From: Octopus sinensis | Taxonomy: Eukaryota | DNA length: 64,000 nt | Assembly (NCBI RefSeq): GCF_006345805.1 | Contig: NW_021832223.1 | Coordinates: 310,001 to 374,000 of the forward strand | Direction of reading: 5' to 3' | Shown here: one piece after another, positions 2,301-63,169 of the stretch | How positions within the stretch are numbered: the stretch's first letter is position 1 | How the letters are laid out: each line of letters opens with the position of its first letter | Made by a program: the position numbers and the translations under genes | The notes under the pieces: model-generated | Database searches by the model: none | Seen by the model: only the letters and a program-made list of their open reading frames with translations | Told to the model about the DNA's origin: nothing

Positions 2301-3945
2301 TCGCTCTCTTATCCATGTTATTAATAACGAGATAATTGAACTCAATAAATATCCCGAAAAATCAAACCCAACTAAAAGACTATTTTTATATTCCAAAGCA
2401 AATGTATGACAGAGCTGTGTAGTACCTATCACAAATGGACTGACATAATAAACCTCGTTGCAAATATATCCTCTTATTTGAAAGACAAGATTTAAATCTA
2501 TAAATATCCAGACAGAAATAAAGATGATGGTGAGGTGAAGGGACAATGAACATGATTCAATTATTAATTTGTTACTAATATTTGTGTTTTATTGGGTTTC
2601 AAATATAAACTTTAATTCAAACTACTTTTAGCTAATTCAAATTTATTTGTAAAAGAAAATAATTCCTTTTTATACACATAGAGGTATAAAAGCATACAAC
2701 TTTAAAATGCCTCAAACATGTTTACAGTAAAACCTCTGGTGCTCGCCATTTTCGGGACCAAAGAAAAAATGGCGAGCAATAGAATTTGGCGAGCAATGGA
2801 AATAATCAATAAATTTTTTGACTTTGAAATTTTGAAAACATCTCGGTTTTCGATACTTTCCGATCATAAGTGAGCCTTCCAAGTCATATTTGAGTAAAGC
2901 AACAAAGAGAATCGAAAGAAATTAAAAGGAAAAAATTAACTAAAAAATCTTTAATAGTTTTTTTAATTCAGCCATATTTCTAATAACGGTGTCGATTAGT
3001 TCCAACGAATTTATATCAAAATTTTCATTTTGATAAAAGAATGACTTTATTTTTTTCAACATTTTCAAAGCCTCTTCTGAATTCACATGAGATTCGTCAT
3101 TATGGGTATCTTCATCTTCTATTTTTGTGGGAAAGAATCTCCAGCAATATTAAGGTAATCTTCAATTTCATATATTTCGGTAAATTCATGATTAATAAAA
3201 TCATCTTTATCCACCGGGTCCAATATTTTCAAGATATTTACCATTTGATCATAATTATCAATTTCAACAGTTTGTCTTTCGAGTTGATTTTCACATTCGA
3301 TCCATTTTGAATGTCCGAAACAATTTGTAATTGTTTTAATCGTTACTTTTTTTCCAGGCAAAATATGTAAAAAGAAGACCGTCTTTTAAGGTTAATTTTT
3401 TATGAGCTTCCAGTGGATTTTCTCCATTATCAATTTTTTCTAACATAAACTCAAATTTAAATTTATTAAAATGTCCTTTAAAGATCTAATGATTCCTTGA
3501 TCCATTGGTTGTAAAATTGTTGTAGTCTTCGAAGGTAGGTAAAGAACTTCAATTGACTCTAAATCAGCGTAAAGTTTATGGGATGGGCATCGATCCACAA
3601 CTAAAAGAATTTTTCGTTTTTTAGAAGCCTATCCCATGTTAAAAGCCATTCGTTAAAAATTTTACTTGTCATCCATGCTTTTGGTGAATGACAGTAATTG
3701 ACAAAATTTCCGACTTTAAAATTTTTAAAGCAGCGAGGTTTCTGGAACTTTCCAATCATAAGTGGAATTTTTTGTTTGTCCCAGTCATATTTGAGCATAG
3801 CAACAAAGAAAATCTAAAAAATAAATAAAAATTAAACCGTTCTTTAAGGATTTTATGTCCATATCGAACCTTCTGACAAACACTTTTTGGAGGGATAGAT
3901 TTGTAAAAAATCCCAGTTTCATCAGCGTTATAAATGTTTTCAACT

Positions 3946-4871
3946 GGTACTTTTGTCGAATGTCGCAGTTTTTAGAAGATAATTAAATTAATTAATTTTT
4001 TTAGTGAAAATAGATTATTTAATTTATAACCCTCTATCAATAATTTAAATGGTTATTAAAATTATTTAAAAATTTATTTACCAATTTAGTCATTTTTAGT
4101 ACGCGGCATCCAAATTCCAGGACTGTAGAAGGAATTTATGTCTTTTACAATCTGTGCAAAAGATTCCTTATAGTTCTGTATTTGTTTTCGCCACATAAAT
4201 TCTGAAAAAATAACTAACTAAAAAAACCTGCGAAATAAGATCCCAGATGATGTCTTACAGCTCCTCTTTGAGCTTTATTCTTGCATTTTGCACTTCCCCA
4301 CATTCGTTCTACTGTCTGGGTGTGCACTCTTCCAGAGTTGTTTTTCCGTTTGGAAAACATACTCTCGTCTACCTCCACAATCATACCAGGACCACCTGAA
4401 ATAAACATTAATAATACCAATTTTGCCGTCAGATCTTTTAACAAGTGCGTCCACACAGACTTCACGTAAAAACATAGCCCAATCGACATATGTATGTTCA
4501 CCCCAATTGTATTCGTGATGAAGCCATTTGAAGGTATGCCTATCGTAACTCCATAAGTATATGTAGGCGATGACATCCTCAAATGGCAATCTACAATTCT
4601 CTAACCAGGTATCTAGAATTATTTGAGAGAAATTATACCTTTTTTAATAGAACATTGGACTCTACAACCAACTCTTGAGCATTTCCAATTGAGCTTCGGT
4701 CCCAAGACTAATTCCATCTGATGTCCCTTCGGACATATACGTGATTTTGAAAGGATATCCACATTTTGCAGAAAATGCACTGCATCCTCCTTACTTATTG
4801 GGATTTTTAAAAAGGCCTATTAGATTTTTTAAAAGGCCTAAAAAAACTGCGACCACTTCGACAAAAGTACC
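3946..4871 (-). mobile_element. Merlin (IS1595/ISXO2-like) transposon, internally deleted, nested in the pogo element
   Basis: TIRs GGTACTTTTGTCGAA..GTCGCAGTTTTT at both ends. 9-bp TSD ttttcaact/ttttcagca. GGPGMIVEVDESMFSKRK is joined directly to VHTQTVERMWGSAK, so the central DDE region is deleted. Confidence 0.9.
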
Positions 4872-5011
4872 TTTTCAGCATTATATTGTTGAATCTTTGC
4901 AGAGATCAAAGAAGTAAATGCATCAATTTCTTGTTTCTGATCAACTTTTATATAAAAAATAGTTTAACCAAAAAAAATATTTTTAAAAATTAGTGGCGAG
5001 ATTTAGAAAAT

Positions 5012-5146
5012 GCCGAGCAATAGAATATTTATCAAAATTTACTAGAAATTTCTAATTTTTTGAAAAATATGTGGCGAGCAATAGAATATTTATCAAAATT
5101 TACTAGAAATTTTTAATTTTTTGAAAAATATGTGGCGAGCAATAGA
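5012..5146. repeat. 61-bp tandem duplication in the pogo subterminal region (about 2.2 units)
   Basis: Units starting G[CG]CGAGCAATAGA at 5012, 5073 and 5134. Confidence 0.85.
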
Positions 5147-5209
5147 GGTGGCGAGTAACAGAGGTTTTACTGTATTTCAAACATGTCCAGCTAACATTCA
5201 ACAGTGAAA

Positions 5210-6130
5210 GAAGTTCAAGGCTGGGTCTTATTAAGAATCGGTTTTATATTATTAAAATTGATTTTTGGATTTATTTTAATTTCTTATTTTTGTGTGATTA
5301 ATCATTTTTAACACATAATCCAGTATTTTCGTACTTAGCAATAATTTCAGACAATTAAGGGAGAGAAAATAAAGGTTAGATTTATTTATCCGAAAAATAT
5401 CAAAGAATTAGTAAACTAAGAAAAAGTGCTAATCCCGTAATAACCAGTCTATGCTGAAATCTGCCGGTTCTTTAGTTTCTAAAATGAAAAAAATGAAAAA
5501 AATTCAAACTGTTATTATTGGGAGGGGCATCATTTTGATGAAATCTAGTTTTATGTTATAACATGGAATACGAAAATGCACTATTGGTTCCCGTGGACAT
5601 TAATTCATGTAGGACTGCCATGGTCACTTCATTTTTGGGATTGACTTGATAGTCTGGGTGTAAGGACTGGCCAAACCTTTGTATTCGGTGAATTTTGAAT
5701 TATCCAACTTCCAAATACTGGCATGTTTCTCATCGTTGCACTTTGGACACTTTTTCATTCCAAATAGCGCGATGAAACTCTCTATTTATACTAGTCCGGC
5801 ACGTGCGTATACACAAGTATCATTTTGATAAACTCGGCAAATTTATGAACATATGTGAGTGATATGGTCTTACTCAGAGGACTGGATAGTCACACAAATT
5901 TGGTTCTTGCTCTGTAAGTAATACAGTATTTTCCATGTTTTATGGATTAAGATTTAATTCCGCACTTTTGATTGTTTTATGAATATATGTATTTTGTGGC
6001 CTTGTAAGTTTTAATTGGTTAATTACATGACTATACTTTATTGCTTAGAAGTGTGTTTGAGATTAATATTTTCGAGGTTACTTTACTTAAGTAATATTGT
6101 GGTATATGCAAAAATTCATAATTAAATGCA
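5210..6130. repeat. About 0.85-0.9 kb duplicated segment, inverted copy at about 57500-58330
   Basis: Long near-identical tracts, e.g. 5700-5830 vs the reverse complement of 57715-57845. Confidence 0.9.
5429..5758 (-). CDS. Putative spliced micro-gene or pseudogene, copy A (paralog of 57784-58106), with eh1-like C-terminus
   Basis: Three GT-AG introns (23, 27 and about 31 nt) give MKKCPKCNDEKHASIWKLDNSKFTEYKDYQVNPKNEVTMAVLHELMSTGTNSAFSFHQNDAPPNNNKTKEPADFSIDWLLRD*. Exon lengths match copy B. True start is uncertain. Confidence 0.55.
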
Positions 6131-6749
6131 TCATCTTTCCCGATACGTGTATAAGTTAAATTGGTGTTTAATACTAATTACTGGGCATTGTTAATAACTA
6201 AGAGGACTACTTTTGTGCATATATTTTAAATTTACAAAAATTTGTGTTTCCAAACTTTTTGTATAAGCAGTTCCTTTTCAAGAATATTATTATTTTTTGA
6301 TTAATAGTTCTATCGACGGAATCAAGTCCCCAGTTTGAAATTACAATATGTATTTTATTATGTCAGATAGTTTTGCAAAAACTAGGTACGATGTTACAAT
6401 TGCAACTGAACTGAAAATACAACATAAATACCTGATATATTCTTTTAATACAAAAAAATTAAGATGGAAGTTGCCAACTCTATAAATAATCGAAAATCTA
6501 TGAAAGTAGACTTTTTCATTCCAAAGGGGCGGGAGTTGGCAAGACTGCGAAAATATGACATTCCAGAATTTAAAATTAATTTAGAAAGTTAGGATAATGA
6601 TTGTAACGATTTTCCTGAGATAAGATTTTATCTACATTTTTTCAGAATATAGACCTTTTTAGGATCAAAGAAAGTGTCAAGGATTACAATCACTTTGAAC
6701 AAAAATTGAAAGGTGGCTTTTAACTACAAATTAAATCTTAAGAATACGT

Positions 6750-6900
6750 CCCAAACAAACGAATTTGCACAGAATAAAACAGTCATTTCATCAGGTCGTT
6801 TCCCGTCGCTGCGACCAACCTCAATATATTCAAACATAAAAAAAATCGGCGACATCACAATGACGTTGCATTCCGGATAAACATTCCTGTACACTGCACA
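6750..6900 (-). mobile_element. Internal CRE-like RLE fragment
   Basis: GRSDGKRPDEMTV..FVWD resembles the RSDGKRPDG..VWD PD-(D/E)xK core. No TSD seen. Confidence 0.5.
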
Positions 6901-7081
6901 GGACGAGAAATAATATATACAGACCATCGTAGTTCACAGAGACGCAGTACGCCGTAGGGTGAGGTCAGAACTAACCAAATTGATATAAAGAGCTAACAAA
7001 GCAACAAAACAAACAGAATTAAAGAGAAATATTAACCCGTGGATCGAGGTTAGACAAGTACGGTTAGTAAAATTAGAGAAA

Positions 7082-8609
<1,528 letters not shown>

Positions 8610-9407: not shown

Positions 9408-12400
9408 TCAATCGACAAACAATCCGTGCCAACGGTCGGGGACCATCCACAAGTAGGAATTGAGAGCCCGCAGAAATCGACTCCGATAGTGCGAAGGATT
9501 CAAAATTGTGGGGGCCTTGCCTCAAAAATCAAGACCACTCCAAACCAATCGAGCCAAGAATGCCCGAGGACTTGATGGCCGTCTCCAGACGCTTCAACAA
9601 AGTATATGTCTGCAGGTAATCTACCATGACAAGGACACATCACCGACTAATCCCACAAAAACTGATTTCTGAGTATTATTGACTGCCAAGAGAAGGGAAT
9701 AGTCGACAATCCCATTCGACAGGAGGAACTGAGTGTCGTCTTCCAAAGCAGTCATCAGCATCTGCTTTGTGTAGAACGACACAAAAATGGTGTCCTCGAC
9801 TCCCCCTGCACTCACTTACATACGACAACTCTCAAAAAAGTTTTGATCCATCAGCACTGAACTCAGAGACTCGTCCACCAGCCGATTTCTGACGGATCCC
9901 TTCAAATCGTAGATCTGAGTAGACAAATCAAATCCAACCTGTCGAATGAATAGGCGTGGAATAAATTCTCCATCACAATCAGATCAATGCTCGTAGTGAC
10001 CTCACTACTCAGATTACGACAGGACACGTGGTAAAACCCCACGATTTTTGCCAGGACACAGGGTTTCTGGGTAGACAACAAGAACAACGTGTGTTTGGTG
10101 TCTCCTGAGGATGTGCTCCGTCAGTTCTGGGCATAACTTCTCGAGGCATTCGAGTTCGACAGAATTGACTGTTTTCATCACAAATCGGCCGTCTTGTCGT
10201 AAATAAAACTGACAACCAGCAGTTTTGTAAAACAATGACTTGGAACTTCCCCCAGCCGACTTCCAGGGAATACAGTCCCGCAATGATCTGATAAAGTCGT
10301 CGTGTGAAGACTCGATCACCGCATCACGGAACCAGTGAAACATTTTACCGTGGAGAACCACGCATTTAAACCACACTCGCGAGTCACCAAACTCTATTTC
10401 GTGATTTCCCAACAAAACCTATCGTGAATTGCTTTTCCGTCGTTTCCGCCGAACTGTCGAGGTCCCGGGCTCCCCACCTGTCCACCATATCACGGTAAAG
10501 AGGGGTACTGAACATTATCACCCTCAACAACTTCAACACGTGGGCGATGATGGTTCCCGGACATTCCACGTCGATGACTACGAGGAGACTGTTGAATCCA
10601 CACTCCAAGTAAATGTTGCTCACTCCCCTACAGTCACACAAATGTCAACACCAGGGGGAAACGATTTTCGGGAGACAATCCGTCGACTTGGCACGACAGC
10701 ACGTGGATAGCTGTTCTTGGTATGAAAGACCTTCGAACTGAATGACTGAGGCATTCCACTTTTGGGAGGACACTTTGGCCACAAACACCCCCGAGTGGTC
10801 GATTCGGTGGACAGGACAGTCCTCACTGCCAGTCATCAAACAAATCGACTTGTTCCAGTGAGACACGAGGTTGAACACGGAAGCCTTCACTCGGATCAAG
10901 GAGTCCTCGAGGATGTGAGTGCCACACATTTCCTTCTTGATCAACTCGTCAATCGCCATCATCGACTGTCGGACTGTCTTTTCCAGTTTCTAAAGAATGG
11001 GGATTCAAAATGACCCAAAACGTGAGGAAAAACTGAGAACTGGACATTCTCTCTTCCAGAACTGTCACTTCATCAACCAGAGCATCGCAGAAAGCAGTGG
11101 CTCTGCCGAGTTTAGGACAAATAGAAACCTCTCAAGAACAGAAGCCAAATCCTTCGGATAATTAGGAGTAAAAGTGGGAATATTCTTCCGAGGAATGAGC
11201 ACTTCATAACACGTGATGTGAAGAACTCTACTGAATACTACAATCCAACTCACCGAATCGAGAACAGCGACTTGGCCACGGCATAAAAAATAATTCCGTG
11301 GGTGAGCAAGGAATGTCCGCACCCCTCCATCCCCAGCGAGTCCGCGGTGAATAGAATTCTCATAAAACGGACAAAAGAGACCGTCTGTCCACACAGGTAC
11401 CCCACAGAGGAAGTCTGAGGATACACACACCGACCAACTGTTTTGCAGGACACACAATAAGTCCAGCAAATAATTTCCTGGGCGGATGGAAGTGACCGTT
11501 TGGGGGGAATAACCGCAATCACCACCTGCCTACTTCCGTGGACCAATCTGAGCAGGTGGTCGTTGAAGGATGAGCCACACTGACAGTTCGTCCTAAACAT
11601 ATAATCCAAGACTACCTGAAAGCATGTCTCCGAATAAAATCCCCCAAAGATTGGTCATCGTTCAATTCCTCCACTCTGATATCAACGCAAGGAAACATGT
11701 GCTGTCTCAGAGGCAGTTTTTGCACGTTGAATGTGCAGAACAGGTTGGTCTGGTTGACTGGGTCTATAAACAGAGTCTCTTCTAAAGTAGGCGGCATGTC
11801 CTCTCCAACACAGAAGGGGATGATGCTCCGGAAATGAGCCAGTCGGTCGGGAGAGGAGGGAACAGGCCGGCAATGAGGGACAGAGGAAGATGAGATGTCT
11901 TCCTGAGGGACACTGGACTGCCCACTTTCTGAGGAAATCAGTCCCGAATGGAGAATGATAGTCTCGACTAGTGAGGACACATAGCTGTAAGTAGTGAGGG
12001 AGTTGGGGGTGATAGCGAATGGGAAGGACACCACGTCGTCGATTTGCAGAGTCGTTGGATGTTGGGAAAAGTGACCAACGAAGCCCACAATCAGCATGAG
12101 AATTCTGGAAAGCACATTATTCTTAATGTTTTGTTGAATTTTCTCGTCAGATGTGCTGGTCAGGTGGTCCTTCTGCTGGGAAATGTGTTCGAATAGAAAT
12201 TGGGTCGTTTCGTTGGGGGAGGACAACTCAAAGACATGAACAGAATCCTCCGTGAATACACGGAATGAACGACGAGCCAACACAAAGCTGATCGGTCGGA
12301 CCCTCACAAAGTCCTCGGAGTCACGTAAAATGCATTCCAGGCTCCAAAAAAGGGACATTTCACTAAAACAGGACAAAACAAAGTCGAGGATCAAACGGAA

Positions 12401-13858
12401 TGCCCGAATGGTCTATTTTGTAAACACATTCCCCCAACCCTCGCCAATCCACTCCTATCTTTCCCTGAGATAATAACTGTGTAATATTTGGGTCGCGTGG
12501 ACCCCGAGAAACACACAAAACTACGTTTGTGGCCACGGACAGAGACGAATTGGCGGACGGAAAAAGACGGAGACCTCCCCAAACACACCTCCGCCTCCAA
12601 AGCATTGACCGAAGCCACCACCTCCGCTCCCGTAAAGAAGGCAAGTCTCTCAATCACTTTCTACACTCCTTTAATCATTTACCATTTTGACGTTAGACAG
12701 GAGCAGGATTCCGTGAAACAGCAGCAGACGTCGTAGAAACCCGCTCGCCGCCCCCTCCGTGATGACCACGTGCGGGCAAATGAGTTTGATTTTGGCGAAT
12801 ATTTTGAGTTGGTATATTTCCGCCTGCTGAATGAGAGGGACTACCTCAGACTGGAATTCCGTCAACGGAACATAGCCTGCGGTGTTTCGGAAATCCACTG
12901 ACCCCGAGATAAGCAACAATGAGACATTTTCCATGTCCTCGATCACGTTTTTGTGTTCAAATTGATACGAAAAACCCACTCCCTGGAAGAACTGAATGGC
13001 AGGCTCGTCGCAGACCACCATCTGCTGTCCACCAGTGCCAGAACTCACTGATTTGACGTGATAGGGATAGTCTTTGTACTCCGGAGGGTCGACTGGGATC
13101 AGTTTTCGCAGTTCGTTGACAGTTTCGATGGTCTTTAATGCCCAAATGTGTTCAATTTTCCTCAATTTGAACAACGAGAAAGTCAGTTCTCTGAAATACT
13201 GACTGAATTTGTTTCTAAATAATATAAAACAGTACAACTACCCGTTCTCATTCGAACGTGGGTGACTGCTGTGTTGTAATTCCATTTTTACTGGTTTATT
13301 GTACGCGGGACAACCTGGGATGTCGAGAGACTGCAGAAACTGTCCGTATTTGTCCGCAAGGACCACCGTATCGTGGAAAAACGGAGGAGAAACGCAAATT
13401 AGAGGGAAGTTAGGGTCATCAGTCATGTTTTGGGTCGACAGGAGTTCTAAGTAACTCGATTTGGGGAGGACAGGATCCCTCGCGGTCTGGGAATTCCTTC
13501 TGATGGATACGGCCGGCTGGTTAGTTTTTGGTCGGCAGTAGAGGCACGTGACCTCCTTCGAGTCTACGGGGATGGGACTGTCGGGACAACCAGTCGACAT
13601 GGCCGGACACCACTGCGACGAACAGTTCGAACAAAACCGCTTTTGGCAAAGACCGCACTGTTTTTGGAAAAATGAAATGCTGGTTCGACACTCAAAACAT
13701 TTTTTGTCCTCAGACATTTTGTCATATTTCTGGGTTGTTGTAGTCGGGGTCACCTTGAGGACACTTTCCGTGTATTTGTCGGGGTCCATCTGGACGCTCA
13801 GTCTGTCTACGTCTTTTGGACTATTTGATGTGACCCATCCGTGTTTGGGTGAGGACAT
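9408..13858 (-). CDS. PIKFYVE: PIKfyve/Fab1 PI3P 5-kinase, multi-exon, compact
   Basis: N-terminal FYVE-like Cys finger, Cpn60/TCP1-like domain (IERLAFFTGAEVV), and PIPK domain (FVMKTV, LIVMENLF, IVDYSLLL, DYLQTYT). C-terminus PTILNPSHYRSRFLRALNSYLWMVPDRW. Many 23-27 nt introns; not every junction resolved. Confidence 0.9.
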
Positions 13859-16081: not shown

Positions 16082-16481
16082 TCTGTTGGAATTGCAATGT
16101 ATGCTTAATTGTCAATATTGATTTAATATATCACCTTTGCTTGAACTAAATTAAGTTTGCTGAATAAAAAAATATATCGAATATGCATGTCTAATAAAAA
16201 TTCCAACGGAAATTCGGTTTTATGACAGGCAAGTCTTTTAGTGTTATTTTGAGCAATGAAAAAAAATTCTCAGGTATCCTGTATCTTTTGAAGTTTTCAA
16301 AAGTTTTGTCACTTTTATGTTTTCTAAAAGATAGTTAAACAAAAAGTCTTCACTGTCGGTGATTTAATTTCTAATAAAATTTTTAAAATTCATAAATATG
16401 TCAAAATTATTGTTTCATTCAAAAAATATAAATTCATGAAAATTATGGAAATTTATGAATAATCTGTTAATCGTTAGAATA

Positions 16482-17292
16482 CAGTGCTGGTAGAAAAACC
16501 GGTTTGAAGTTACTAACTTTTTTGGCGGATAGCATTAATTTCTAAATGAAATAAGAGTTGAAGTTGATTATATTTTAATCTTTTTTCTTTAAAAAATTTC
16601 AATATCGCCGAAATTTTAAAAATTTAAATTTTGCAGTGAATAAAAACCGGTTTTAACAAAAAGAGTTAACAAAATCAACAGTTAATATGTTGTGTGGTAT
16701 CCTCGATAATAAATAGCTGTATGACCTTTAGGATGCTATCAATTAACTCTGAATACTTTCAGACGGCAAAGTAATTCCAATTGTCTTTCTACAGACACTC
16801 TTACCAGTTAAATGGTTATTTCATTCCCAAGTGTTAGAAGATTTTTGGATCGCACTCAACAAGATGCAATAAATTTTCAATGTCTGTTTTTTGAAGCTTT
16901 TTAGGACGCCCGAACCAGGAATCCATCAATAGTTCATATTTTTGAATTTTCGGAAGAAAATCTCCGATTGTCGATTTTGGAGATTAGATGATTGCAATAT
17001 CTTTTATCGTCCAATTAAACTCATAAAGAGCAAGAATCTTCCTGTATTATTTATTTAACATTTGCTTATAAAACTAAAATTCAACAACTAAAATATCACT
17101 CAATAATGAAAACCGGTTTTTTATTCACACGCTAAAATTTAAATCATCGAATTGTAAACGATTAATGAATTTTTTATAAATAAAAAAAATATAATCTAAT
17201 CAACTACAAAGAGTTCGATTCATTAAAAAAAATAAATGCTATCTGCCAAAAAAGTTAGTAACTGCAAAACCGGTTTTTTTCTACCAGCACTG
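16482..17292 (-). mobile_element. Tc1-like element, internally deleted
   Basis: About 45-bp TIRs CAGTGCTGGTAGAAAAA..CCGGTTT..AGTTACTAACTTTTTT with TA TSD. Frameshifted N-terminal HTH remnant (WTIKDIA, GRPKKL, VCRKTIG). Confidence 0.85.
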
Positions 17293-17533
17293 TATGGTTA
17301 CATCAAGCCAGGTCCTTTTATATATCTACATTATTCTATAGAAACAGACCCTCAGCAGGACCTTGGTTACGGTAAGCAAAACGAGCTCCAAGCTAGTTTA
17401 TTGATAAAAATTTACACAAGGCTTATTTCTGATTATACAACAAATTATTTCTTGATCCAACAACCGCTTAATCAAAGTAATTAATCTTTTGTTATTCGTG
17501 CATATAATTTGTTGCAATGTTATTTCCCGATTC

Positions 17534-18611
17534 GGATCACATTAAAAACGCCCCCAAATATACACATATTAAACAAACGCCCCCAAATTTACACATATTA
17601 AACAAACGCCCCCAAATTTACACATATTTAACAAACTCCCCTAAATTTACACATATTAAACAAACGCCCCTAAATTTACACATGTCAAACATTCGACGAA
17701 AACATTAAAATGATGTAAAACTAAAAATCAAATTTATAAATAAATACTATACTTTAGAACAAGTTTATTGAACAACATAATAATTTTCAAAGCTCCATTA
17801 ACTTTCAAAAGGATCACCAATACGTTGTCACGCCACATAAATTCGTTTAGGTAGTCTTGTAAAAATTCTTTTTTGACACCTTTCATTTTCTTACAACGCA
17901 ATTTGTTTTTATTCCAATAGGACTCCACATGTTGGTATGAACACCGGTGGTTGGTTCAATAAAGTTAATTGAGTGGTTCACAGTAGCGTGGTCATACCCA
18001 AAAACATTCAAATTGGAATAGGCCCTCCATTCATCAATAGGATAATTGATCCTGGCAGAATTACTTCACAGATAATTGGTTTTAAAGTGGCCGCTGATCG
18101 ATTTAGAACCACTCGCATAAAACCTCTTGCCGGTGAAAATGAGGTATCAACAATACCGAATACCCACACTTGAGAATTAGCAAGTCTACCCCGATGGTAC
18201 TTTTGTTTATGACAAAAGAGACTTTCATCGATTTGGCAGACTACATTTTCTTCACCCAATTTTACGGGATTACTTTCAAAGTGTCTGTTAATACATTTTC
18301 TAATGGTTTTAAAAATTTCTATAAGTGTTGGAGATGATACAGTCAGTGATTTTTTAATCATAACAATTGATTCTTCATTGCTCCACCTATACAAAATATC
18401 TAACCATGTTTTGAGACTTATACTCGAAGTAGCCAAAACAGAACCTGTTCGTATTGACAATGTGGTCTTGTATTTTGAACAGTTTTGATTCTGACATTTC
18501 CAAGTATATTGGTCAGATAAGGTACGCTTAACTTCACACATATTAAATAAACGCCCCTAACTTTACACATATTAAACAAACGCCCCTGGGGGCGTTTGTT
18601 TTATGTGATCC
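17534..18611 (-). mobile_element. Merlin (ISXO2-like DDE) transposon
   Basis: TIRs GGATCACAT..AAACGCCCCCA. Perfect 8-bp TSD CCCGATTC (17526-33, 18612-19). Transposase QIDESLF..KYHRGR..WVFG, then after a 1-nt frameshift DEWRAY..HATVNHS..GVHTQHVESYW..YLNEFMWR. Confidence 0.95.
17546..17690. repeat. 29-bp tandem array (5 units) inside the Merlin end; 2 further units at about 18530-18587
   Basis: Unit AAACGCCCC[CT]AAATTTACACATATTAAAC with period 29. Confidence 0.9.
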
Positions 18612-20583: not shown

Positions 20584-21961
20584 ATGCGCACACCAGTTGC
20601 CATGAATTTTGACAAGCCCATGCGCATTGATGGGTTCTGTGACCTTGGTGACCCCACTGGCCACGCGGGTCACACATTGCCTGTTTACTCTTTAGGCAAG
20701 ACATACACCCCGAGTTACCTTTCCAAAGGCTTTCACCCATGTGTGGTGTGTGGGGACGCCTCCACGGGATTTCACTACAAAAAAATGACTTGCGAGGGCT
20801 GCAAGGTATCCCTCTACATCAGTTTTCAGGGGTTCTTCCGACGGACAGTCCAAAAGCAGATCGAATATAAGTGCAAGTACAACAACTCTTGCAAAATCGA
20901 AAAGAACACTCGCAATCAGTGTCAGGACTGCCGATTCAAAAAATGCATCGACAGTGGCATGGACCGATGGCGTAGGTGTCCTTGCTTACTCTTAGTCGTA
21001 CTCTCCGACAACCAGCGACTGGCCAAGCGACAGTTGATTGAGAACAATCGGGTCACCAAGAAAAACGGACAGTCCCGGACTCAGAACGAGACAGGCATTC
21101 AAGAAAGCCAACAGGAAGAGAAATATATGGCCATGCTAAAGGAGTGCTACGATAAGGATCTTGCGCCTTTGATGGGAGTGCCGAGGAGTCTCACAATCAT
21201 CTGTAACCACGAATTCAAGTTGTACAACACCGACAAGACCTTCACGTTCTGTACAGAAAACGACGACGAAAAGTGGCTAGAAATTGTCAAGGCAATCAGC
21301 ATGGGGACAAATCACTTGTTCAAATTTATCACCAAAATGACTTTGATAAACAAGGTTAATGGGTTATGTAACGTCCATTCAGTTCTCCCCTGAAGATAGG
21401 GCAAATCTGCTCAAGAATTCCCTTACGGAAACCACTCTTTTGTGTGTATTCCAGAAATATGCATGTTTGGACAATCCGATCAACTTCCCTAACGGACTGA
21501 TTGTCTTTCCCGACGGAATGCAAAGAACTGAGAACGTTCAATTTCTGGAGAACCTGTTCAGCCTGGCCAAGTCCTTCAACAATATTAGACTGGATTCCTA
21601 CGAGTCTGCCCTCTCTTTGTGCATTTTAATGTTCCGTCGAGGTCCCTGCTTGTGTTCTATGATAGGGAATGTACAAGTGGAGGACACGTGCACTGCAGAC
21701 TTTGAACTACAGAGGTACATCCAACTGCTCAAAACGTACGAATCCTGCCTTCAAAGGGCAGGAAGATGTGAACAGATTTTAATTGTGTTAAGTCATCTAC
21801 ACGAACTGTCCGCCCAACTGCAGGATAAGATGCTCACACTAAACGTGGACCACATTCAGAGAATCCCCGAAGTGATCCTCGAGTGCATCCACGTCGTCGA
21901 AAACTCTGAGAGTTCAGACTCTTTGACCTCTGAAAACACTTCCGACGAAAACCTGAAATAA
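20584..21961 (+). CDS. THR: Thyroid hormone receptor-like nuclear receptor (NR1A)
   Basis: YTPSYL..CVVCGD..CEGCK|[17 protein letters not shown] and the TR-type hinge [19 protein letters not shown], followed by a divergent LBD. Introns 20806-829, 20972-995, 21355-382 and probably 21642-665. Confidence 0.87.
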
Positions 21962-37150: not shown

Positions 37151-37910
37151 CGGGGTTTGGAAAGAAGAGAATGTTTCACGATAAGGTGCCCACCAATTTT
37201 TGTATTCAGATGTATAAAGTTTTTCTGCGTACTTTTTCTATCTATTTCGAATACTAGACGTCAATATACTGAAGAATATAGACTCCTTTCACAGCAAGCA
37301 GCTGCCCCTTTTAAATGGACTTTAATGGCCTTTTAAAAGCAATAATCAGTCACTCTATAAACACTAAAACGCCAACTGCAGCAATTGTGGCAGATTATTG
37401 GAAATTGTTTGGGAACATCCCAAGACTCACTAATCACGCTAATCTTGCAATGCACAAATACTTCATGGTGATAAATATCATGGACAGTCAAGACCCCTGT
37501 ACAATATGTGGTGACCCGGATTCTTTACGGACTCTGTCCAGAAAAATGGTGCTGGACTAGAATGGTTCAGAAAATTATCACACGTGTGGGATTATAACTT
37601 TATGTCCCCATGTCATAAAATTTTTTTATTATGTTCATAAAGATTATTTAATACAAATCGCTTAATTATGTGATTTCCATTCTTCGCTAAGTAGAAGAGT
37701 TGGCCACAAACTTTTTTGTCAATTTTTGTGTTAAGGTTTTTGTTCAGCTGGGTGTTTTGAGGCATACCAGTCCGCAAGTTGATTATGTGTAATAATTTAA
37801 TTAATTTATGGTCGACTTACAAATTAAGGCATATCCGGGTGGTGGCTAATTAATTATTTTTAATCGTAAAATTAAATGTTCAAAAATATAGTCAATATTC
37901 GACCAATTAA

Positions 37911-43021: not shown

Positions 43022-44533
43022 CAGTAAAACCTCTCGAATCCGCCGATTTTTTGGTCGGTCCCAAAATCGGCGGATTCGAGAAGCAATTTAAATAATATTT
43101 TATAGTTGAAATATGAACTTACAATATAGATTAAGTATTTCTTTTTATATACAAATGACTGAATACATAAAATTATTTATATTCAAAAAAATCAGAAATT
43201 TTATTTTTTTTAATTGATTTTCTTAACATTTCCCCAATTCGCATAATATTTTCATGATCATCTATATCTGCATTTACCTGAGAAGCATAAGTTTTAATAA
43301 TCTCTAGAGCTCTGAAGGCTTCTGAGAGATCAACTTTTTTCTCATTTGATTCCTCTTCAATAATTGTTTCCTAAGTATAATTATTAAATAAAATCACTAA
43401 CTGATTGAACTTTTTTTTGACTGTAATGTACCAGCTTGTTCAGATTTGTCTAAAAATTCGATTAGCTCTTCATTTTCAGTATATCCGTAATCAACAAATT
43501 CACTATAAGATATTGGATCGTCAATTTGAAATTTCTTCATGATTATTTTCGTAGTTCTTAGATTCACTGTTGATTGTGATTGTTTCACATTTTATCCATT
43601 GTGAAATGGGTGTAGGTAACATATTTTCCAATGTTGAAATTTTTAAAACACCTTGGACTTTTGAATCTTCCTATCATCACAGGCCTTCTTTTATCGGAAC
43701 CAGAACAATTTGCGCATAATAATAACGAAAATCGATCCTTCGACAACTTTATTCCAGGCCGTGATTTGGTGCACACACTTTTGGAAGGAATCGCCTTGTA
43801 AAAAACACCAGTTTCATCTGCATTATAAACATTGTCCAATCCATATTGTTCAATTTTTAAACGCATTGTTTCATTAAAATCAGTAATAGATTTTTCATCA
43901 TGATTTACTGATCCACTGTCTCCGTGATATTTTCTTAACTTGATAGCATTTCGTAATTTAAACTTTTCTAGCCACCCACGACTTGCTTTAAATTCTGGAA
44001 AATTTTTTCCAAACTTAAGAGCTTTTGCAATTAACATCGAATCTGATAGAATTGCTCCACTAGATTCCATTAAGTTAATCCATGTTATCATCGCTACATC
44101 AATTTCATTAAATTTGAGTTTTGGAATTCTCGTTATGTTTAATTTTTTGATGTCAGTCCTATTCAAAAGGTCCGATTTTGATTTAAGGTCGTTTATAGTT
44201 CTCAGAGAAATTTTCTTTTTTAACCGTGAAGAAAAATCCTGGAAATTTGAGGTGCAGAAACGAATGGGTTGTCAGAAATATAACGTAGTATAGAAATTTT
44301 TCGTTGATAGAAAGTCTAACACAGCGACGCATCACAAAAATACAATTAACGTGTAATGAGAATTTTAAAATGTTAATTAATTTAACTTACAATTAGATAA
44401 ACAAATTATTTTTCATAATACTTGAGGAGCGGATTCGAGAAACAAGCGGATTCAAGAATCATTCATAGGAAATTTCAAATTTTTGATTAAAACAAGCGGA
44501 TTCGAGAAGCAGCGGATTCGAGAGGTTTCACTG
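43022..44533 (-). mobile_element. pogo/Tigger transposon, internally deleted
   Basis: 22-bp TIRs CAGT[AG]AAACCTCTCGAATCCGC with TA TSD. CENP-B HTH (FKASRGWLEKFKLR) and NVYNADETG. The DDE domain is truncated after YTHF. Confidence 0.92.
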
Positions 44534-56200: not shown

Positions 56201-56868
56201 AAGCACACTGTGCAGCATATAGAATATCGGTAATTTGATTAATATCTTGGGGCGGATCATCTTTTGTAATATGATAAATTGCAGAATTTAATCCAGCCAG
56301 GATATCAGTTTTTACCATCCTTCGTTGCACCTTTGGAGTTGGCTTTCGAGAGTCTCTCTGAATAGACTGAACTTTCCCAATTGGAATTTGAGTTCCTCTA
56401 GGCAATTTCTGAAACTGGAAATTTCTACGTCCACATCATCTTGCACTCTGGAAGAGTCGCATCTCCCTTGCACATTGTTATTCCGTCTAGCCATGCTCTT
56501 TAGTTGGCATAAACTGGAGCACTTTGCCGAGTACTTCTCATTGAACTTCTCCAGGACAAGGTTCCAACCACCTCTTGGCATCCTTCCAAGTCTTTGCTTC
56601 GCGGCAAGGGCAATCTGAGACACCCATTCGCCTTCAGAGACACCATTGACATTTCCGATGATCGCAGAAAGAGAATGCAAGTTAGTTTTGGCAGCATCAC
56701 CAACAAGATCTTCTTTAACACCATTAGCTCTTGTGGCATTGTGAGGTCCCATAGGCGACGGTCCTGTCTTTTTTAAGTTCTTTTTATTTGCAGGAAGGCC
56801 CGTAGGTTTCGTTTTCCTTAACTGTTTGGAAACGTACATGCACACACCACAACAACTAAAATAATTTT
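53294..56868 (-). mobile_element. R4/Dong-like non-LTR retrotransposon (single ORF RT + RLE), near full length, three 1-nt frameshifts
   Basis: RT motifs (WKACG.DG, DLRPITC, DVKKAFDSV, GILQGDSLSP, FFIDDLK, YRYLG), CCHC finger (C..C..TVDHLATRC), RHNEV and KPDI..IEV..EK..KY. 15-bp flanking repeat AATATTTTTAAATAT at 53279-93 and 56869-83. Confidence 0.92.
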
Positions 56869-57783
56869 AATATTTTTAAATATAATATATATTTTATTTA
56901 AATGTTTTTAAAAAGATATTTAATTTGGCAGCTTTACTGGATTTGGTATCTTTACTGGATTTAATCTGGTTTTTCGTTTTTCCGATTTTCCGTGCGTTTT
57001 TTGTGTAGTTGGAATAAGTCTCCCGTCTAGATTGTATTAACGTCGATAGATGTTGTGTTGAGTCCTACTTAATTGTCGGGAATTGAGAGATTGGACACTA
57101 AACTGTTCAATTAATAATTTTCTTAGCCATAACAGTCAACTGCTGATTAGTGTAATTTCTTTATCAGATACTCTAATACATTTTCTCCCCATTTTACCAA
57201 AAACTGTCGAGTGTAGTTTCAGTGTATCGGAATGAATCCTCTAGAAACTTAGTTTTGAGAAATGGAAAAAATTCAATTTCCAAATTGTATAGGATTACAA
57301 TTCCCCAAACAAAAGTTTTTTGCAAGAATGTGGATCTTGCTGGGTTTCACATTAAAATTTAACTTTCTTTTTATCAAATTCGTGATATTAATTTTGACTT
57401 TATTTATATTTCTTGATTAATATGCTTAGTAATACCCCAAAAATAGTATTATACAGCAAGGATAACTTACAAAGGTGTCAGTAAAGAGTTCTGAATTATA
57501 TCCCAATATTATTTGGGTGAAGTAACCTCAGAAATATTAATTTCAAATACATTTCAGTGCAGTGAAATACAGAAAGCAAAAAATGTGAAATTAAATCAAT
57601 CCATGAAACATGTGAAATACTTTATTATAAGTAAAAGACTCAATTTGTGTGACTATCCAGTTATCTGAGTAAGGCCATATCACTCACATATTTTAATAAA
57701 TTTGCTGAGTTTGTCAAAATGATACTTGTGTATACGTACGTGCCGGACTAGTATAAATAGAGAGTTTCATTGCGCTATTTGGA

Positions 57784-58106
57784 ATGAAAAAGTGCCCAAA
57801 GTGCAACGATGAGAAACATGCCAGTATTTGGAAGTTGGATAATTCAAAATTCACCGAATACAAAGGTTTGGGCAGTCCTTACACCCAGACTATCAACTCA
57901 ATCCCCAAAATGAAGTGACCATGGCGGTCCTTCATGAATTAAGGTCCGTGAAAACAAATGAAACATTTTCGTATTCCCTGTTATAATATAAACTAGATTT
58001 CAACAAAAAGATACGTCTCCCAAGAATGAAAGTTTGTAAAATTTTCTTTATTTTAGAAACTCAAGAACCGGCAGATTTCAGCATAGAATGGTTATTACGG
58101 GATTAA
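57784..58106 (+). CDS. Putative spliced micro-gene or pseudogene, copy B, with eh1-like C-terminus
   Basis: Introns 57866-888, 57971-996 and 58032-056 give MKKCPKCNDEKHASIWKLDNSKFTEYKDYQLNPQNEVTMAVLHELRSVKTNETFSFQQKDTSPKNEKTQEPADFSIEWLLRD*. Confidence 0.55.
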
Positions 58107-58499
58107 CACTTTTTCTTTATTTACTAATTCTTTAATATTTTTTGAATAAATAAATCTAACCTTTATTTTCTCTCCCTTAATTGTCTGAAATTATTTATAA
58201 ATACGAAAATACTGGCTTATGTGTTTAAAATGAGTAATCAAACTAATATAAGAAACTAAAATAAGTCCAAAAATCAATTTTAATAACTATGAAACATTAA
58301 AGTCTGAATAAAACCCAGTCTTGTGCGACTAAGTAGTTCAGTCTACACTTTCCAATCAAAATCGTTTATAATGAAAATATGTAAATCTAAACTTGATATC
58401 AAGTTTTCAATCATTGTTTCTCCCAATTATTAATATATATTTTTTCGCAAGAACAAGGATAGAAAAAGTAACTCAAAGGATAGTCGAGAGCCTGAGGGT

Positions 58500-58950
58500 C
58501 AGCCCCATGACGCCGCACTGCTCATTGAATGGCAGTTTCCGCATGAGCACGACGACCGAGATTCTCTGAAAGAGTCAGCTCGTTTCCCTCCCGTCGTTTG
58601 TTTTCGAAGAGATTCTCATATCAGTGAGGAGTTGAGTCGCGACCTTGCCGACGCTTCCTAAGGTTTCGAAAGCAATACGCATGTATTTTGGACTCTTTAA
58701 CTCTTCGGCCTGAAGACTGGCGAAGTCCGGGTTGCTGCATGTCTCAGGTAGCGAGGTCACCGAAAAAGAGTCAACGCAGGTGGTGTCCCAAACCAGGGAC
58801 TTACCTTCCCTGAAAGGTCCTCCTTGACAACGTCGTTGAGTTGACTGTGACAAAGAATTCGTACATGACAAGGCGTGGAAGCCGTTTGATGAAATTGTCG
58901 ACCCGCATCAACAAGGGTGGGGCTGGCATATGTCCAAGCCCATGCGTAAA
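58500..58950 (-). mobile_element. Degenerate CRE-like fragment (zinc finger plus RLE)
   Basis: CGSTISSNGFHALSC, GKSLVWDTTCVDS, IAFETLG, ETS*LFQRISVV. Confidence 0.65.
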
Positions 58951-62402: not shown

Positions 62403-62940
62403 TCAGTCCCGATTATTGGGAATCTCTCTCCTCCTTTTAGGAGAAGAGCTTGCAACCAATTCCTCCTCACTCTCCATCTCCCCGTCAGATAGATTTTCTA
62501 TTTGTCTCATATCTTTCACCGGCGTGTCACGGCAGCATGCCACTTCTGCAAGCTGGTAAGCAGCAGAGGCGTATTCTTCGGCAGATACTCTCACTCCATG
62601 TCTGTGCTCAACTGCCATGCTTTCTAGCGTTCTTTTTAAAACAACAGATTGAATATAAGTTCTTGTGGCTTTTTCAATCGATAATTTGTCCATATAGTTT
62701 TTGAAGTATCTCGAAACAACGCCATCCCACGTCAAGACAAACGGGATAATCTTTACCTTTGCATCATAAAGTATCGAAAGTTCGTTTGCGAGCAGATCAT
62801 ATTTATGAAATTTCTCGATTTCGACTTGTTTAAGGCGATCTTGTGAAGTGATGCCAACTTCGATTATAGTTATCTCTTGTTTAGTTTTGTCATACACGAA
62901 GATATCTGGTTTGTTGAATTGAACTTTATTCCGTCATAAT
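62403..62940 (-). mobile_element. 5'-truncated sister copy of the R4/Dong-like element (RLE end)
   Basis: FNKPDIFVYDK..IEVGITSQDRLKQVEIEKFHKYDLLANEL, clearly homologous to 53336-53850 but diverged. Confidence 0.85.
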
Positions 62941-63169
62941 TAGGGCAAATTGTTTCTAGCACTTAAAATGATCAAATCTAGCATTTAAAATTGTAAAATC
63001 TATAACTTAAAATAATAAAAATTTATTTATTTATTTAAAAACCAAGAGCACCGTCAGGCCAGAAAACAAGATTAATTAGGTGATCCCGACATTCCCAATC
63101 AGACTACGCATCCTCTCTCTGTGTTCGATATGATCCCCAAGCGCCAAAATAATAAAAATAACATTTAAA

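What the first reader, a model, noticed from the sequence alone, without database searches (positions are those of the whole stretch)
5210..6130. Hidden duplicated micro-gene with a Groucho-binding eh1-like tail, missed by the ORF track
What looks like a dispersed repeat (inverted copy at about 57500-58330, 52 kb away) contains the same 4-exon frame in both copies. Exon lengths are identical, and indels in this stretch fall only inside the predicted introns (23/23, 27/26, about 31/25 nt). Exon 1 differs by one synonymous change, the middle is variable, and both copies end ADFSI[DE]WLLRD-stop (TAG vs TAA). FSIxxLL resembles the eh1 motif (FxIxxIL) that recruits Groucho/TLE. The product could be a roughly 82-aa repressor-like microprotein or the tail of a longer gene.
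Basis: partly seen in the sequence, partly recalled or inferred. Interest (0 to 1): 0.7.

Follow-up and report, generated by a model that had tools for sequence, protein, structure and literature searches.

The report
Duplicated repeat with unproven micro-ORF
Two inverted copies of a roughly 1-kb repeat in a dicyemid (Dicyema) genome both allow the same small spliced reading frame with a Groucho-type motif, but the tests I could run do not show that it is a real protein-coding gene.

Summary
The window comes from a Dicyema genome, where introns of 22-30 nt are normal. A unit of about 0.9-1.0 kb occurs twice in inverted orientation (5218-~6195 and ~57428-58323) with 14.7% mismatch. FSI[D/E]WLL fits the published eh1 consensus.

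The gene reading is not established.
- Codon usage lies outside that of host exons.
- No homologue was found.
- The last exon is no better conserved than the 89 nt after its stop.
- Keeping such a frame in two copies has p of about 0.01 (strict null) to 0.07 (lenient null). In a single sequence, 26% of ATGs can be threaded to 82 aa or more.
- 1283 alternative splice paths are compatible with both copies.
- Proposed intron 1 removes YKGLASP, the only stretch with a weak database match (TRP_2, below threshold).

Divergence is strongly uneven. Two islands stand out: a TATA-like stretch plus the first 135 nt of the ORF, and the last exon plus AATAAA. I therefore favour a small lineage-specific transcription unit of undecided coding status. 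A dead repeat with patchy homogenisation is the close rival. RNA-seq and genome-wide copies would decide.

The parts
5218..6195 (-). Repeat copy 1, whole unit; the candidate gene reads on the - strand
   Evidence: Alignments and blastn. 130 mismatches and 96 gap columns in 983 columns against copy 2.
57428..58323 (+). Repeat copy 2, whole unit; the candidate gene reads on the + strand
5640..5886 (-). Conserved island 1 in copy 1 (equivalent to 57656-57902 in copy 2): about 128 nt upstream of the ATG plus most of the first 135 nt of the ORF
   Evidence: 4.9% mismatch against 19.8% in the middle segment, Fisher p = 1.2e-5. Identity profile.
5783..5790 (-). TATAAATA box, 25-32 nt upstream of the ATG (copy 2: 57752-57759)
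   Evidence: Read from the sequence. TATAAA occurs 1.18 times per kb per strand in AT-rich DNA of the window, so the chance of one in such a 20-nt window is about 0.02. The layout resembles that upstream of ATP5B.
5624..5758 (-). Unspliced 44-aa ORF MKKCPKCNDEKHASIWKLDNSKFTEYKGLASPYTQTIKSIPKMK (copy 2: 57784-57918)
   Evidence: the ORF listing. 4 differences in 135 nt, 2 synonymous and 2 non-synonymous, omega 0.2 with no statistical power. Conservation drops just after its TGA. Weak Pfam TRP_2 match of 21.3/18.2 bits against a cutoff of 27.
5677..5758 (-).
   Evidence: One synonymous difference.
5654..5676 (-). It would remove GLASPYTQ.
   Evidence: It contains the YKGLASP part of the TRP_2/TRPC6 alignment.
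5572..5653 (-).
   Evidence: 68/82 identical. Omega 0.88 for codons 28-54, which are essentially exon 2.
5545..5571 (-).
   Evidence: Holds the 1-nt indel.
5510..5544 (-).
   Evidence: 27/35 identical. Omega 1.72 for codons 55-66, which are essentially exon 3.
5479..5509 (-).
   Evidence: Holds the 6-nt indel.
5429..5478 (-). Carries the eh1-like heptad.
   Evidence: 6.0% mismatch, the same as the 89 nt after the stop (5.6%).
5340..5490 (-). Conserved island 2 in copy 1 (about 58045-58195 in copy 2): last proposed exon plus about 90 nt past the stop
   Evidence: 6.6% mismatch against 19.8% in the middle segment, p = 0.0017.
5381..5386 (-). AATAAA, about 40-45 nt after the stop (copy 2: 58145-58150)
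   Evidence: Read from the sequence. AATAAA occurs 2.4 times per kb per strand in AT-rich DNA, so this is weak evidence on its own.

Best explanation
This is a low-copy unit of about 0.9-1.0 kb in a Dicyema genome, present as two inverted copies 52 kb apart in transposon-rich intergenic DNA. It contains what looks like a small, lineage-specific transcription unit. The layout is: a TATA-type core promoter built like that of neighbouring host genes, an ATG 25-32 nt downstream, about 330 nt of body, then AATAAA.

Two islands are kept much more alike than the rest. One is the promoter-like stretch plus the first 135 nt after the ATG. The other is the last about 150 nt around the stop and the poly(A) signal. 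This points to constraint on these parts, or to their homogenisation between copies.

Shown: the duplication, the uneven conservation, the signals, and the existence of several frame-compatible splice forms.

Inferred only: that the unit is transcribed. Undecided: whether it is translated and in which form. The eh1-like FSI[D/E]WLL tail is a real match to the consensus. It is currently a pattern in DNA that is equally well conserved past the stop codon, not a demonstrated protein motif.
For: - Two copies only in the window, 85% alike overall.
- Strong heterogeneity: island 1 at 4.9% and island 2 at 6.6% mismatch, against 19.8% in the middle and 18-27% in the outer parts (p = 1e-5 and 0.0017).
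- TATAAATA at -32..-25 and a CATT(G/C) element at about -15 in both copies. This resembles the ATP5B upstream region and that of ORF 51202.
- AATAAA after the stop in both copies.
- The longest two-copy-compatible thread from the conserved ATG is 82 aa. The best from any other conserved ATG is 73 aa on the sense strand and at most 30 aa on the antisense strand.
- Shuffle and mask nulls give 0.1-1% under the strict criterion.
- The proposed intron sizes match likely real introns inferred in this window (22-28 nt, GTT/GTA...AG) and published values (PMC6543705; PMC13644364).
- No transposon ends were found.
- No Rfam family and no unusual RNA folding.
Against: - There is no transcript evidence of any kind.
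- dN/dS is 0.83, and 1.09 in the middle exons.
- Codon usage and GC (37.6%) lie outside the host exon range.
- Under a fairer null that allows in-frame exon indels and unequal stop positions, 6.9% of ATGs in AT-rich DNA reach 82 aa or more in both simulated copies. 26% do so in a single sequence.
- Dicyemid splice signals are reduced to GTa/AG (PMC13644364), so tiny introns are easy to draw by chance.
- Conservation in island 2 is not coding-specific.
- 49% of the D. japonicum genome is repeats (PMC6736024). Mosaic repeat families, or gene conversion between inverted copies, could give the same patchy identity without any function at these loci.
Confidence: 0.42

Rival explanations
1. Non-functional dispersed repeat: a relic of an unclassified element or an old segmental duplication. 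The identity islands would come from gene conversion between the inverted copies, or from a mosaic origin of the two copies. The open frame, the signals and the motif would be chance features of AT-rich DNA in a genome where GT..AG mini-introns can be drawn almost anywhere.
For: - dN/dS is about 1.
- Codon usage is not host-like.
- 26% of single-sequence ATGs and 6.9% of two-copy simulations reach 82 aa or more.
- 1283 compatible splice paths exist.
- Island 2 is equally conserved in the proposed coding part and past the stop.
- Island 1 extends 128 nt upstream of the ATG.
- Both copies sit among transposon debris: Merlin-like and pogo-like fragments near copy 1 and a non-LTR retrotransposon next to copy 2.
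- The genome is 49% repeats (PMC6736024).
- No homologue anywhere.
Against: - No TIRs, TSDs, LTR-type ends or poly(A) tail.
- Only two copies in 64 kb.
- The strict nulls give 0.1-1%.
- The promoter-like layout resembles host genes.
- The drop in identity coincides with the end of the 44-aa ORF.
Confidence: 0.35
2. A 4-exon gene encodes an 82-aa microprotein whose C-terminal eh1 motif binds the WD40 domain of Groucho/TLE. With no DNA-binding domain it would act as an adaptor or a decoy, not as a repressor in its own right.
For: - It is the longest frame compatible with both copies, with equal exon lengths and both indels in introns.
- Intron sizes are typical of dicyemids (PMC6543705).
- FSI[D/E]WLL fits FS[VI]xx[IL][LM] (PMC4943189). 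It is expected about 0.001 times per 82-aa peptide by composition, and 1.7 times in the whole six-frame window.
- The D/E change within the motif is conservative.
Against:
- Intron 1 removes the best-conserved part of the unspliced ORF that follows exon 1, which is also the only stretch with a database match.
- Identity falls in the middle of exon 2, not at an exon boundary.
- Conservation of the motif is not coding-specific.
- No DNA-binding domain.
- One motif match among the hundreds of known short motifs is a look-elsewhere effect.
- Neither dicyemid genome paper mentions Groucho, nor does any paper in the library together with 'dicyemid'.
Confidence: 0.13
3. The conserved 44-aa ORF is a relic exon copied from a host gene, either the first half of a TRPC-channel TRP_2 domain or a WD40 repeat, and carried along in the repeat.
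For: - Pfam TRP_2 (PF08344) is the only family hit, in both copies: 21.3 bits, E = 3.3e-4, and 18.2 bits, E = 0.003, on profile positions 2-32 of 63.
- The alignment to human TRPC6 is ungapped: CxxCN...S...YKGLASP, 12 of 35 identical.
- Ten control translations of AT-rich DNA (7,000 aa) gave nothing better than E = 0.15.
- The WD40-like stretch IWKLDNSKFTE matches P0122.
Against: - The TRP_2 score is below the Pfam gathering score of 27.
- Embedded in a 700-aa translation the E-value is only 0.024 and 0.18.
- The match does not extend into the second half of the domain, even with a frame-shifted continuation.
- No ankyrin or ion-transport fragments in the flanks.
- The TRP_2 and WD40 leads exclude each other.
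- The phmmer hits are inflated by 4-12 repeated stretches in unrelated repeat proteins.
Confidence: 0.1

Closest known systems
eh1 (Engrailed homology 1) Groucho/TLE-recruiting motif, consensus FS[VI]xx[IL][LM] (Copley 2005; PMC4943189)
   Same: FSIDWLL and FSIEWLL satisfy every specified position of the consensus.
   Different: Known eh1 motifs sit in transcription factors that have a DNA-binding domain (homeobox, forkhead, T-box; PMC4943189). This product has none. Translation is unproven. The surrounding DNA is equally conserved beyond the stop.
Ripply/Bowline-type small Groucho adaptors: small proteins without a DNA-binding domain that carry a WRPW motif and bridge Groucho to T-box factors (from general knowledge, not tested here)
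   Same: This is what the 82-aa or 43-aa product would work like if real: a short protein whose main recognisable feature is a Groucho-binding peptide.
   Different: Ripply proteins use WRPW plus a Ripply-homology (FPVQ) region. There is no sequence similarity here, no homologue was found, and no partner-binding region is recognisable.
Taxonomically restricted (orphan or de novo) small-ORF genes
   Same: Short ORF, no homologues, non-host codon usage, dN/dS near 1, promoter-like and poly(A)-like signals. This profile is typical of young genes.
   Different: The same profile fits non-coding DNA. Membership needs expression and translation evidence, which could not be obtained.
Dicyemid mini-intron genes (median intron 27 bp; splice signals reduced to GTa...AG; PMC6543705, PMC13644364)
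   Same: Proposed introns of 23-31 nt with GT..AG, like the 24-nt intron in the nuclear-receptor gene of this window.
   Different: Host exons here have 49.5% GC and clearly positive codon log-odds. The candidate has 37.6% GC and negative log-odds.
Dicyemid repeats and 600-800-bp circular DNA families (PMC6736024; PMC6543705)
   Same: A unit of similar size, non-coding-like composition, in a genome that is 49% repeats.
   Different: No terminal repeats or transposon hallmarks were found. The published circle motifs appear only in figures, so they could not be compared.

Membership tests
eh1-motif Groucho-recruiting protein | Heptad matching FS[VI]xx[IL][LM] (PMC4943189) | tested here: met
FSIDWLL (copy 1) and FSIEWLL (copy 2). 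These are the only two matches in the six-frame translation of the window; 1.7 are expected by composition.
eh1-motif Groucho-recruiting protein | Motif lies in a transcription factor with a DNA-binding domain | tested here: not met
   No Pfam domain at E <= 10 other than chance-level hits.
eh1-motif Groucho-recruiting protein | Motif conserved above its surroundings | tested here: not met
   The proposed last exon has 6.0% mismatch and the 89 nt after the stop have 5.6%.
eh1-motif Groucho-recruiting protein | A Groucho/TLE partner exists in the organism and binds the peptide | not testable with these tools
   The Dicyema genome is not in the searchable collections. Neither dicyemid genome paper mentions Groucho, and no paper in the library holds both 'dicyemid' and 'Groucho'.
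Protein-coding dicyemid gene with mini-introns | GT..AG introns of typical dicyemid length | tested here: met
   Introns of 23/23, 27/26 and 31/25 nt. Compare the 24-nt nuclear-receptor intron and the published 27-bp median (PMC6543705).
Protein-coding dicyemid gene with mini-introns | Reading frame preserved between paralogues beyond chance | tested here: inconclusive
   0-3 of 1000 column shuffles. 6/596 under the strict mask null. 124/1788, or 6.9%, under the lenient mask null. About 20 conserved ATGs were available to choose from.
Protein-coding dicyemid gene with mini-introns | Purifying selection (dN/dS well below 1) | tested here: not met
   Nei-Gojobori omega is 0.83 overall (5.2 synonymous and 19.8 non-synonymous differences) and 1.09 for exons 2-3. 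With only two copies, power is low.
Protein-coding dicyemid gene with mini-introns | Host-like codon usage and composition | tested here: not met
   -0.10 and -0.12 bits/codon, against 0.46 +/- 0.16 for host exons (minimum 0.035). The value falls in the top 5% of AT-rich non-coding windows.
Protein-coding dicyemid gene with mini-introns | Transcript or junction evidence, or homologues | not testable with these tools
   No RNA data were available. No homologue in the 5.8-billion-protein word search (82-aa product). The 1.84-billion-protein exhaustive search (44-aa ORF) gave only repeat-inflated hits. No DNA match in the metagenome or prokaryote genome collections.
TRPC channel TRP_2 domain (PF08344) | Score at or above the Pfam gathering threshold | tested here: not met
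   21.3 and 18.2 bits against a cutoff of 27. Only profile positions 2-32 of 63 are matched.
TRPC channel TRP_2 domain (PF08344) | Neighbouring ankyrin and ion-transport parts of a channel gene | tested here: not met
   Three-frame translations of 4600-6700(-) and 57100-58900(+) gave no other hit at E <= 1, apart from a chance-level zf-tcix hit at E = 0.58.
Transposable element (DNA transposon, LTR, Helitron or SINE type) | Terminal inverted or direct repeats, target-site duplication, TG..CA or TC..CTRR ends, or a poly(A) tail | tested here: not met
   Nothing convincing at either boundary in either copy.
Transposable element (DNA transposon, LTR, Helitron or SINE type) | Many dispersed copies in the genome | not testable with these tools
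   Two copies in this window. The genome cannot be searched with the tools given.
Structured non-coding RNA | Rfam match or unusually stable fold | tested here: not met
   No Rfam hit at gathering score, and only chance-level hits at E <= 10. Folding z-scores are +0.33, +0.37 and -1.49.

The most novel reading that the evidence does not exclude
A dicyemid-specific microprotein of 43-82 aa, with no DNA-binding domain, whose conserved C-terminal eh1 heptad binds Groucho/TLE. It would act as a free adaptor or decoy for the co-repressor in an animal with about 30 cells and a heavily reduced set of developmental genes. It would be present as at least two paralogues with a fast-evolving middle.
Probability: 0.06. 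Interest if true: 0.6.

Novelty: new member of a known kind. Interest (0 to 1): 0.25.

Why it matters
If the unit were an expressed microprotein gene, it would be an unannotated lineage-specific gene in one of the most reduced animal genomes (5,012 predicted genes). It would also be a rare stand-alone eh1 peptide. That would be of interest for how Groucho-mediated repression is wired in a radically simplified bilaterian.

As things stand, the main value is cautionary. In genomes with 20-30-nt introns and minimal splice signals, an open frame can be threaded from about a quarter of all ATGs in AT-rich DNA. Even agreement between two copies is only weakly significant. Claims of spliced micro-genes there need transcript data.

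Tried and rejected
- **Structured RNA gene:** no Rfam match, no tRNA, unremarkable folding. Rejected.
- **Tail of a longer gene:** the upstream neighbours differ between the copies (ATP5B 3' end versus the 5' end of a retrotransposon), and no conserved upstream frame lies within the repeat. Rejected.
- **5' UTR or promoter of the adjacent non-LTR retrotransposon:** copy 1 has no such element beside it, and 6200-7080 shows no similarity to 56500-57428. Rejected.
- **Transposon with recognisable ends (TIR/TSD, LTR, Helitron, poly(A)):** nothing found.
- **Fetching more copies:** exact look-up of ten window ORFs failed. Apart from one D. acuticephalum ATP5B entry, no Dicyema protein turned up in the protein collection. 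DNA pattern scans of the metagenome collection (two scans) and the prokaryote genome collection (one scan) were empty.
- **Spliced 82-aa product as query:** The 44-aa ORF was searched instead and hit only unrelated repeat proteins.
- **WD40 lead (Ciao1, P0122):** the scores are sums of many weak repeat matches, and Pfam WD40 did not hit. Treated as noise.
- **TRP_2 lead:** kept as a low-probability rival, see above.
- **Automatic harvest of real introns from ORF junctions:** too ambiguous for statistics. Used only for a handful of plausible 22-28-nt examples.
- **Comparison with the published motifs of dicyemid circular DNAs:** not possible, because the motifs appear only in figures.
Full report
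**Source and setting**

The window is animal DNA from a dicyemid. The long ORF at 7082-8467(-) is ATP synthase beta, 98% identical over 90% of its length to the Dicyema acuticephalum protein. Other ORFs encode:
- a nuclear receptor, a Kir channel, an adaptin and a WD40 protein;
- a riboflavin transporter, an acyltransferase, a Wnt, Sec24 and a reverse transcriptase.

Coding parts have about 45-50% GC and spacers 30-35%.

The nuclear-receptor zinc-finger exon is interrupted by an in-frame 24-nt GT..AG insert, CEGCK|VSLYISFQ|GFFRR, at 20806-20829. This fits the literature:
- Median dicyemid intron length is 27 bp, and two thirds of introns are under 30 bp (PMC6543705).
- D. japonicum has a 67.5-Mb genome with 36.7% GC, 48.9% repeats and 5,012 predicted genes (PMC6736024).
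- Splice signals are reduced to 'GTa' and 'AG' (PMC13644364).

So introns of 23-31 nt are legitimate here. They are also very easy to draw by chance.

**The observation**

The repeat is real. Inverted arms of 351 nt (92%) and 246 nt (91%) were found. blastn joins them into 730 nt at 88%, with no third copy in the window. From the alignments, the unit runs from 5218 to about 6195 (copy 1) and from about 57428 to 58323 (copy 2). There are 130 mismatches and 96 gap columns in 983 columns.

The candidate gene reads on the - strand in copy 1 and on the + strand in copy 2.
- Exons are 82, 82, 35 and 50 nt, the last including the stop.
- Introns are 23/23, 27/26 and 31/25 nt, all GT..AG.
- Exon 1 has a single synonymous change.
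- The only two indels in the stretch lie in introns 2 and 3.
- Copy 1 product: MKKCPKCNDEKHASIWKLDNSKFTEYKDYQVNPKNEVTMAVLHELMSTGTNSAFSFHQNDAPPNNNKTKEPADFSIDWLLRD.
- Copy 2 product: ...DYQLNPQNEVTMAVLHELRSVKTNETFSFQQKDTSPKNEKTQEPADFSIEWLLRD.

Every factual statement in the finding checks out.

**Is the shared frame more than chance?**

I wrote a path-finder that starts at an ATG conserved in both copies. It allows up to three GT..AG introns of 18-45 nt at homologous positions and reports the longest ORF open in both copies.
- Among the 20 conserved ATGs of the repeat, the next best reach 73, 44, 40 and 37 aa on the same strand and at most 30 aa on the other strand.
- Shuffling alignment columns downstream gave 82 aa or more in 0-3 of 1000 trials.
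- A more realistic null used real AT-rich sequence from this window, mutated with the same pattern of differences and indels. It gave 6/596 (1.0%) when the two copies must stop at the same codon.
- When only conserved splice sites and 82 aa or more in both copies are required, the rate is 124/1788 (6.9%).
- In a single sequence, 26% of ATGs can be threaded to 82 aa or more.
- If introns up to 300 nt are allowed, 1283 different splice paths are compatible with both copies.

The alternative paths include:
- a 43-aa product that joins exon 1 directly to the last exon, with one intron of 198/191 nt (worked out by hand from the sequence, which shows the two exons are in phase; the enumeration prints a near-identical 40-aa variant with a 207/200-nt intron);
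- a 71-aa product that keeps the whole unspliced ORF.

The shared frame is therefore suggestive (p roughly 0.01-0.07 before correcting for the choice of ATG) and not decisive.

**Selection and composition**

- Nei-Gojobori counts for the 82-codon model give 5.2 synonymous and 19.8 non-synonymous differences, omega 0.83.
- For exons 2-3, omega is 1.09. For exon 1 there is one synonymous change and none non-synonymous. For exon 4 there are two non-synonymous changes and none synonymous.
With two copies the test is weak, but it does not support coding.
- Codon log-odds were trained on 3,494 codons of host exons against AT-rich spacer. They are -0.10 and -0.12 bits per codon for the two copies.
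- That is below all 117 host-exon windows (mean 0.46, minimum 0.035) and within the top 5% of non-coding windows. GC is 37.6% against 49.5% for host exons.

**Pattern of conservation**

Divergence is very uneven.

| Segment (copy 1 coordinates) | Mismatch |
|---|---|
| Outer 5' part | 26.7% |
| Island 1, 5640-5886 | 4.9% |
| Middle, 5491-5623 | 19.8% |
| Island 2, 5340-5490 | 6.6% |
| Outer 3' part | 18.0% |

Island 1 against the middle gives p = 1.2e-5. Island 2 against the middle gives p = 0.0017.

Island 1 covers 128 nt upstream of the ATG (7.0% mismatch) and most of the unspliced 44-aa ORF at 5624-5758 (3.0% mismatch).

Island 2 covers the last proposed exon (6.0%) and the 89 nt after the stop (5.6%) equally. 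Conservation of the FSI[D/E]WLL codons is thus not coding-specific.

The islands need an explanation: constraint, or patchy homogenisation between the inverted copies.

**Signals**

- TATAAATA lies 25-32 nt upstream of the ATG in both copies. The chance of TATAAA in such a window is about 0.02, given 1.18 per kb per strand.
- A CATT(G/C) element lies at about -15.
- The putative ATP5B start and ORF 51202 show the same layout: an A/T-rich TATA-like box, CATT(C/G), then the ATG within about 10-15 nt.
- This is anecdotal, but it supports a host-type core promoter with a very short leader.
- AATAAA follows the stop by about 40-45 nt in both copies. It is common in this DNA at 2.4 per kb per strand.

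**Homology**

- The 82-aa product has no Pfam domain and no relative in the 5.8-billion-protein search.
- The contiguous 44-aa ORF found only three hits: a tail-fibre-like repeat protein, a WD40 protein and another repeat protein. All three were scored over 4-12 repeated stretches, so the scores are inflated.
- The 44-aa ORF gives one weak Pfam hit in both copies, TRP_2 of TRPC channels: 21.3 bits, E = 3.3e-4, and 18.2 bits, E = 0.003. The cutoff is 27 and only profile positions 2-32 of 63 are matched.
- The alignment to TRPC6 is ungapped: CxxCN...S...YKGLASP, 12 of 35 identical.
- Controls from 7,000 aa of junk translation gave nothing better than E = 0.15.
- In the same long-translation context, the TRP_2 hit is only E = 0.024 and 0.18.
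- It does not extend with a frame-shifted continuation, and no ankyrin or ion-transport fragments lie nearby.

I keep this as a 10% rival.

**The eh1 reading**

The published consensus is FS[VI]xx[IL][LM], found mainly in homeobox, forkhead and T-box factors (PMC4943189). FSIDWLL and FSIEWLL fit it fully. In the six-frame translation of the window, the pattern occurs only at these two sites. By composition, 1.7 are expected per window and about 0.001 per 82-aa peptide. Looser patterns are common: 85 matches to the loose form.

Against the functional reading:
- The product has no DNA-binding domain.
- The motif's conservation is shared by the untranslated DNA next to it.
- The match was found after the fact among many possible short motifs.
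- Whether Dicyema has Groucho could not be tested. Neither genome paper mentions it, and no paper in the library combines the two terms.

If the protein were real, it would work like a small Groucho adaptor or decoy. The nearest functional analogue I know is Ripply/Bowline, from general knowledge. It would not work like a repressor in its own right.

**What else it could be**

- No Rfam family, tRNA or unusual RNA fold.
- No transposon ends: no TIR, TSD, LTR-type termini, Helitron ends or poly(A) tail.
- Both copies sit in transposon-rich spacer.
  - Copy 1 lies between the 3' end of ATP5B, a 61-bp tandem duplication, and Merlin-like and pogo-like fragments.
  - Copy 2 lies next to the 5' end of a non-LTR retrotransposon, in divergent orientation.
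- The neighbours differ, so the unit is not the tail of a common longer gene.
- More copies could not be fetched, because the genome is not in any searchable collection.

**Verdict**

| Explanation | Probability |
|---|---|
| Duplicated small lineage-specific transcription unit, coding status and splice form undecided | 0.42 |
| Non-functional repeat with patchy homogenisation | 0.35 |
| Relic exon of a TRPC or WD40 gene | 0.10 |

Transcript mapping and a genome-wide census of copies would settle it quickly.

Noticed in passing
window 5011-5146: A 61-bp unit is tandemly duplicated (5011-5071 and 5072-5132, 97% identical), with a partial third unit. It lies directly beside copy 1 of the repeat.
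   Followed up: no
window 17517-17747 and 18520-18605: An array of 29-nt units (AAACGCCCCCAAATTTACACATATTAAAC) and a related unit containing the palindrome GCCCCTGGGGGC bracket an IS1595/Merlin-like DDE transposase ORF at 18008-18541(-). These are probably the subterminal repeats of a DNA transposon. A second Merlin-like fragment lies at 4214-4589(-).
   Followed up: partly
window 53336-56845 (-), 62403-62941 (-), 37670-37784: A non-LTR retrotransposon with an RVT_1 domain and a long C-terminal ORF. A 76%-identical 3' fragment lies at 62.4-62.9 kb and a short piece at 37.7 kb. The ORFs overlap in different frames.
   Followed up: partly
window 43585-44166 (-) and about 3100-3800 (-): A pogo/Tc5-like transposase (HTH_Tnp_Tc5 plus the start of DDE_1) and a degraded second copy near copy 1 of the repeat.
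   Followed up: partly
window 20806-20829 (+): An in-frame 24-nt GT..AG mini-intron inside the nuclear-receptor zf-C4 exon (CEGCK|...|GFFRR). It is a clean local example of dicyemid intron miniaturisation.
   Followed up: yes
upstream of the ATGs at 8609 (-), 51202 (-), 5758 (-) and 57784 (+): Host genes and the micro-ORF share an A/T-rich TATA-like box 20-35 nt upstream of the ATG and a CATT(C/G) element 8-15 nt upstream of it. This hints at a dicyemid core-promoter layout with very short 5' UTRs.
   Followed up: partly
window 16479-16654 and 17109-17295: An inverted pair of about 180 nt at 79% identity in an AT-rich spacer next to the 29-nt array.
   Followed up: no
window 13238-13858 / 12671-13237 / 11612-12394 (-): A chain of long ORFs on the - strand joined by likely 22-27-nt introns, for example GTAGTTGTACTGTTTTATATTATTTAG near 13241. 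None has a Pfam hit at E <= 0.001, so this is a sizeable host gene of unidentified family.
   Followed up: no
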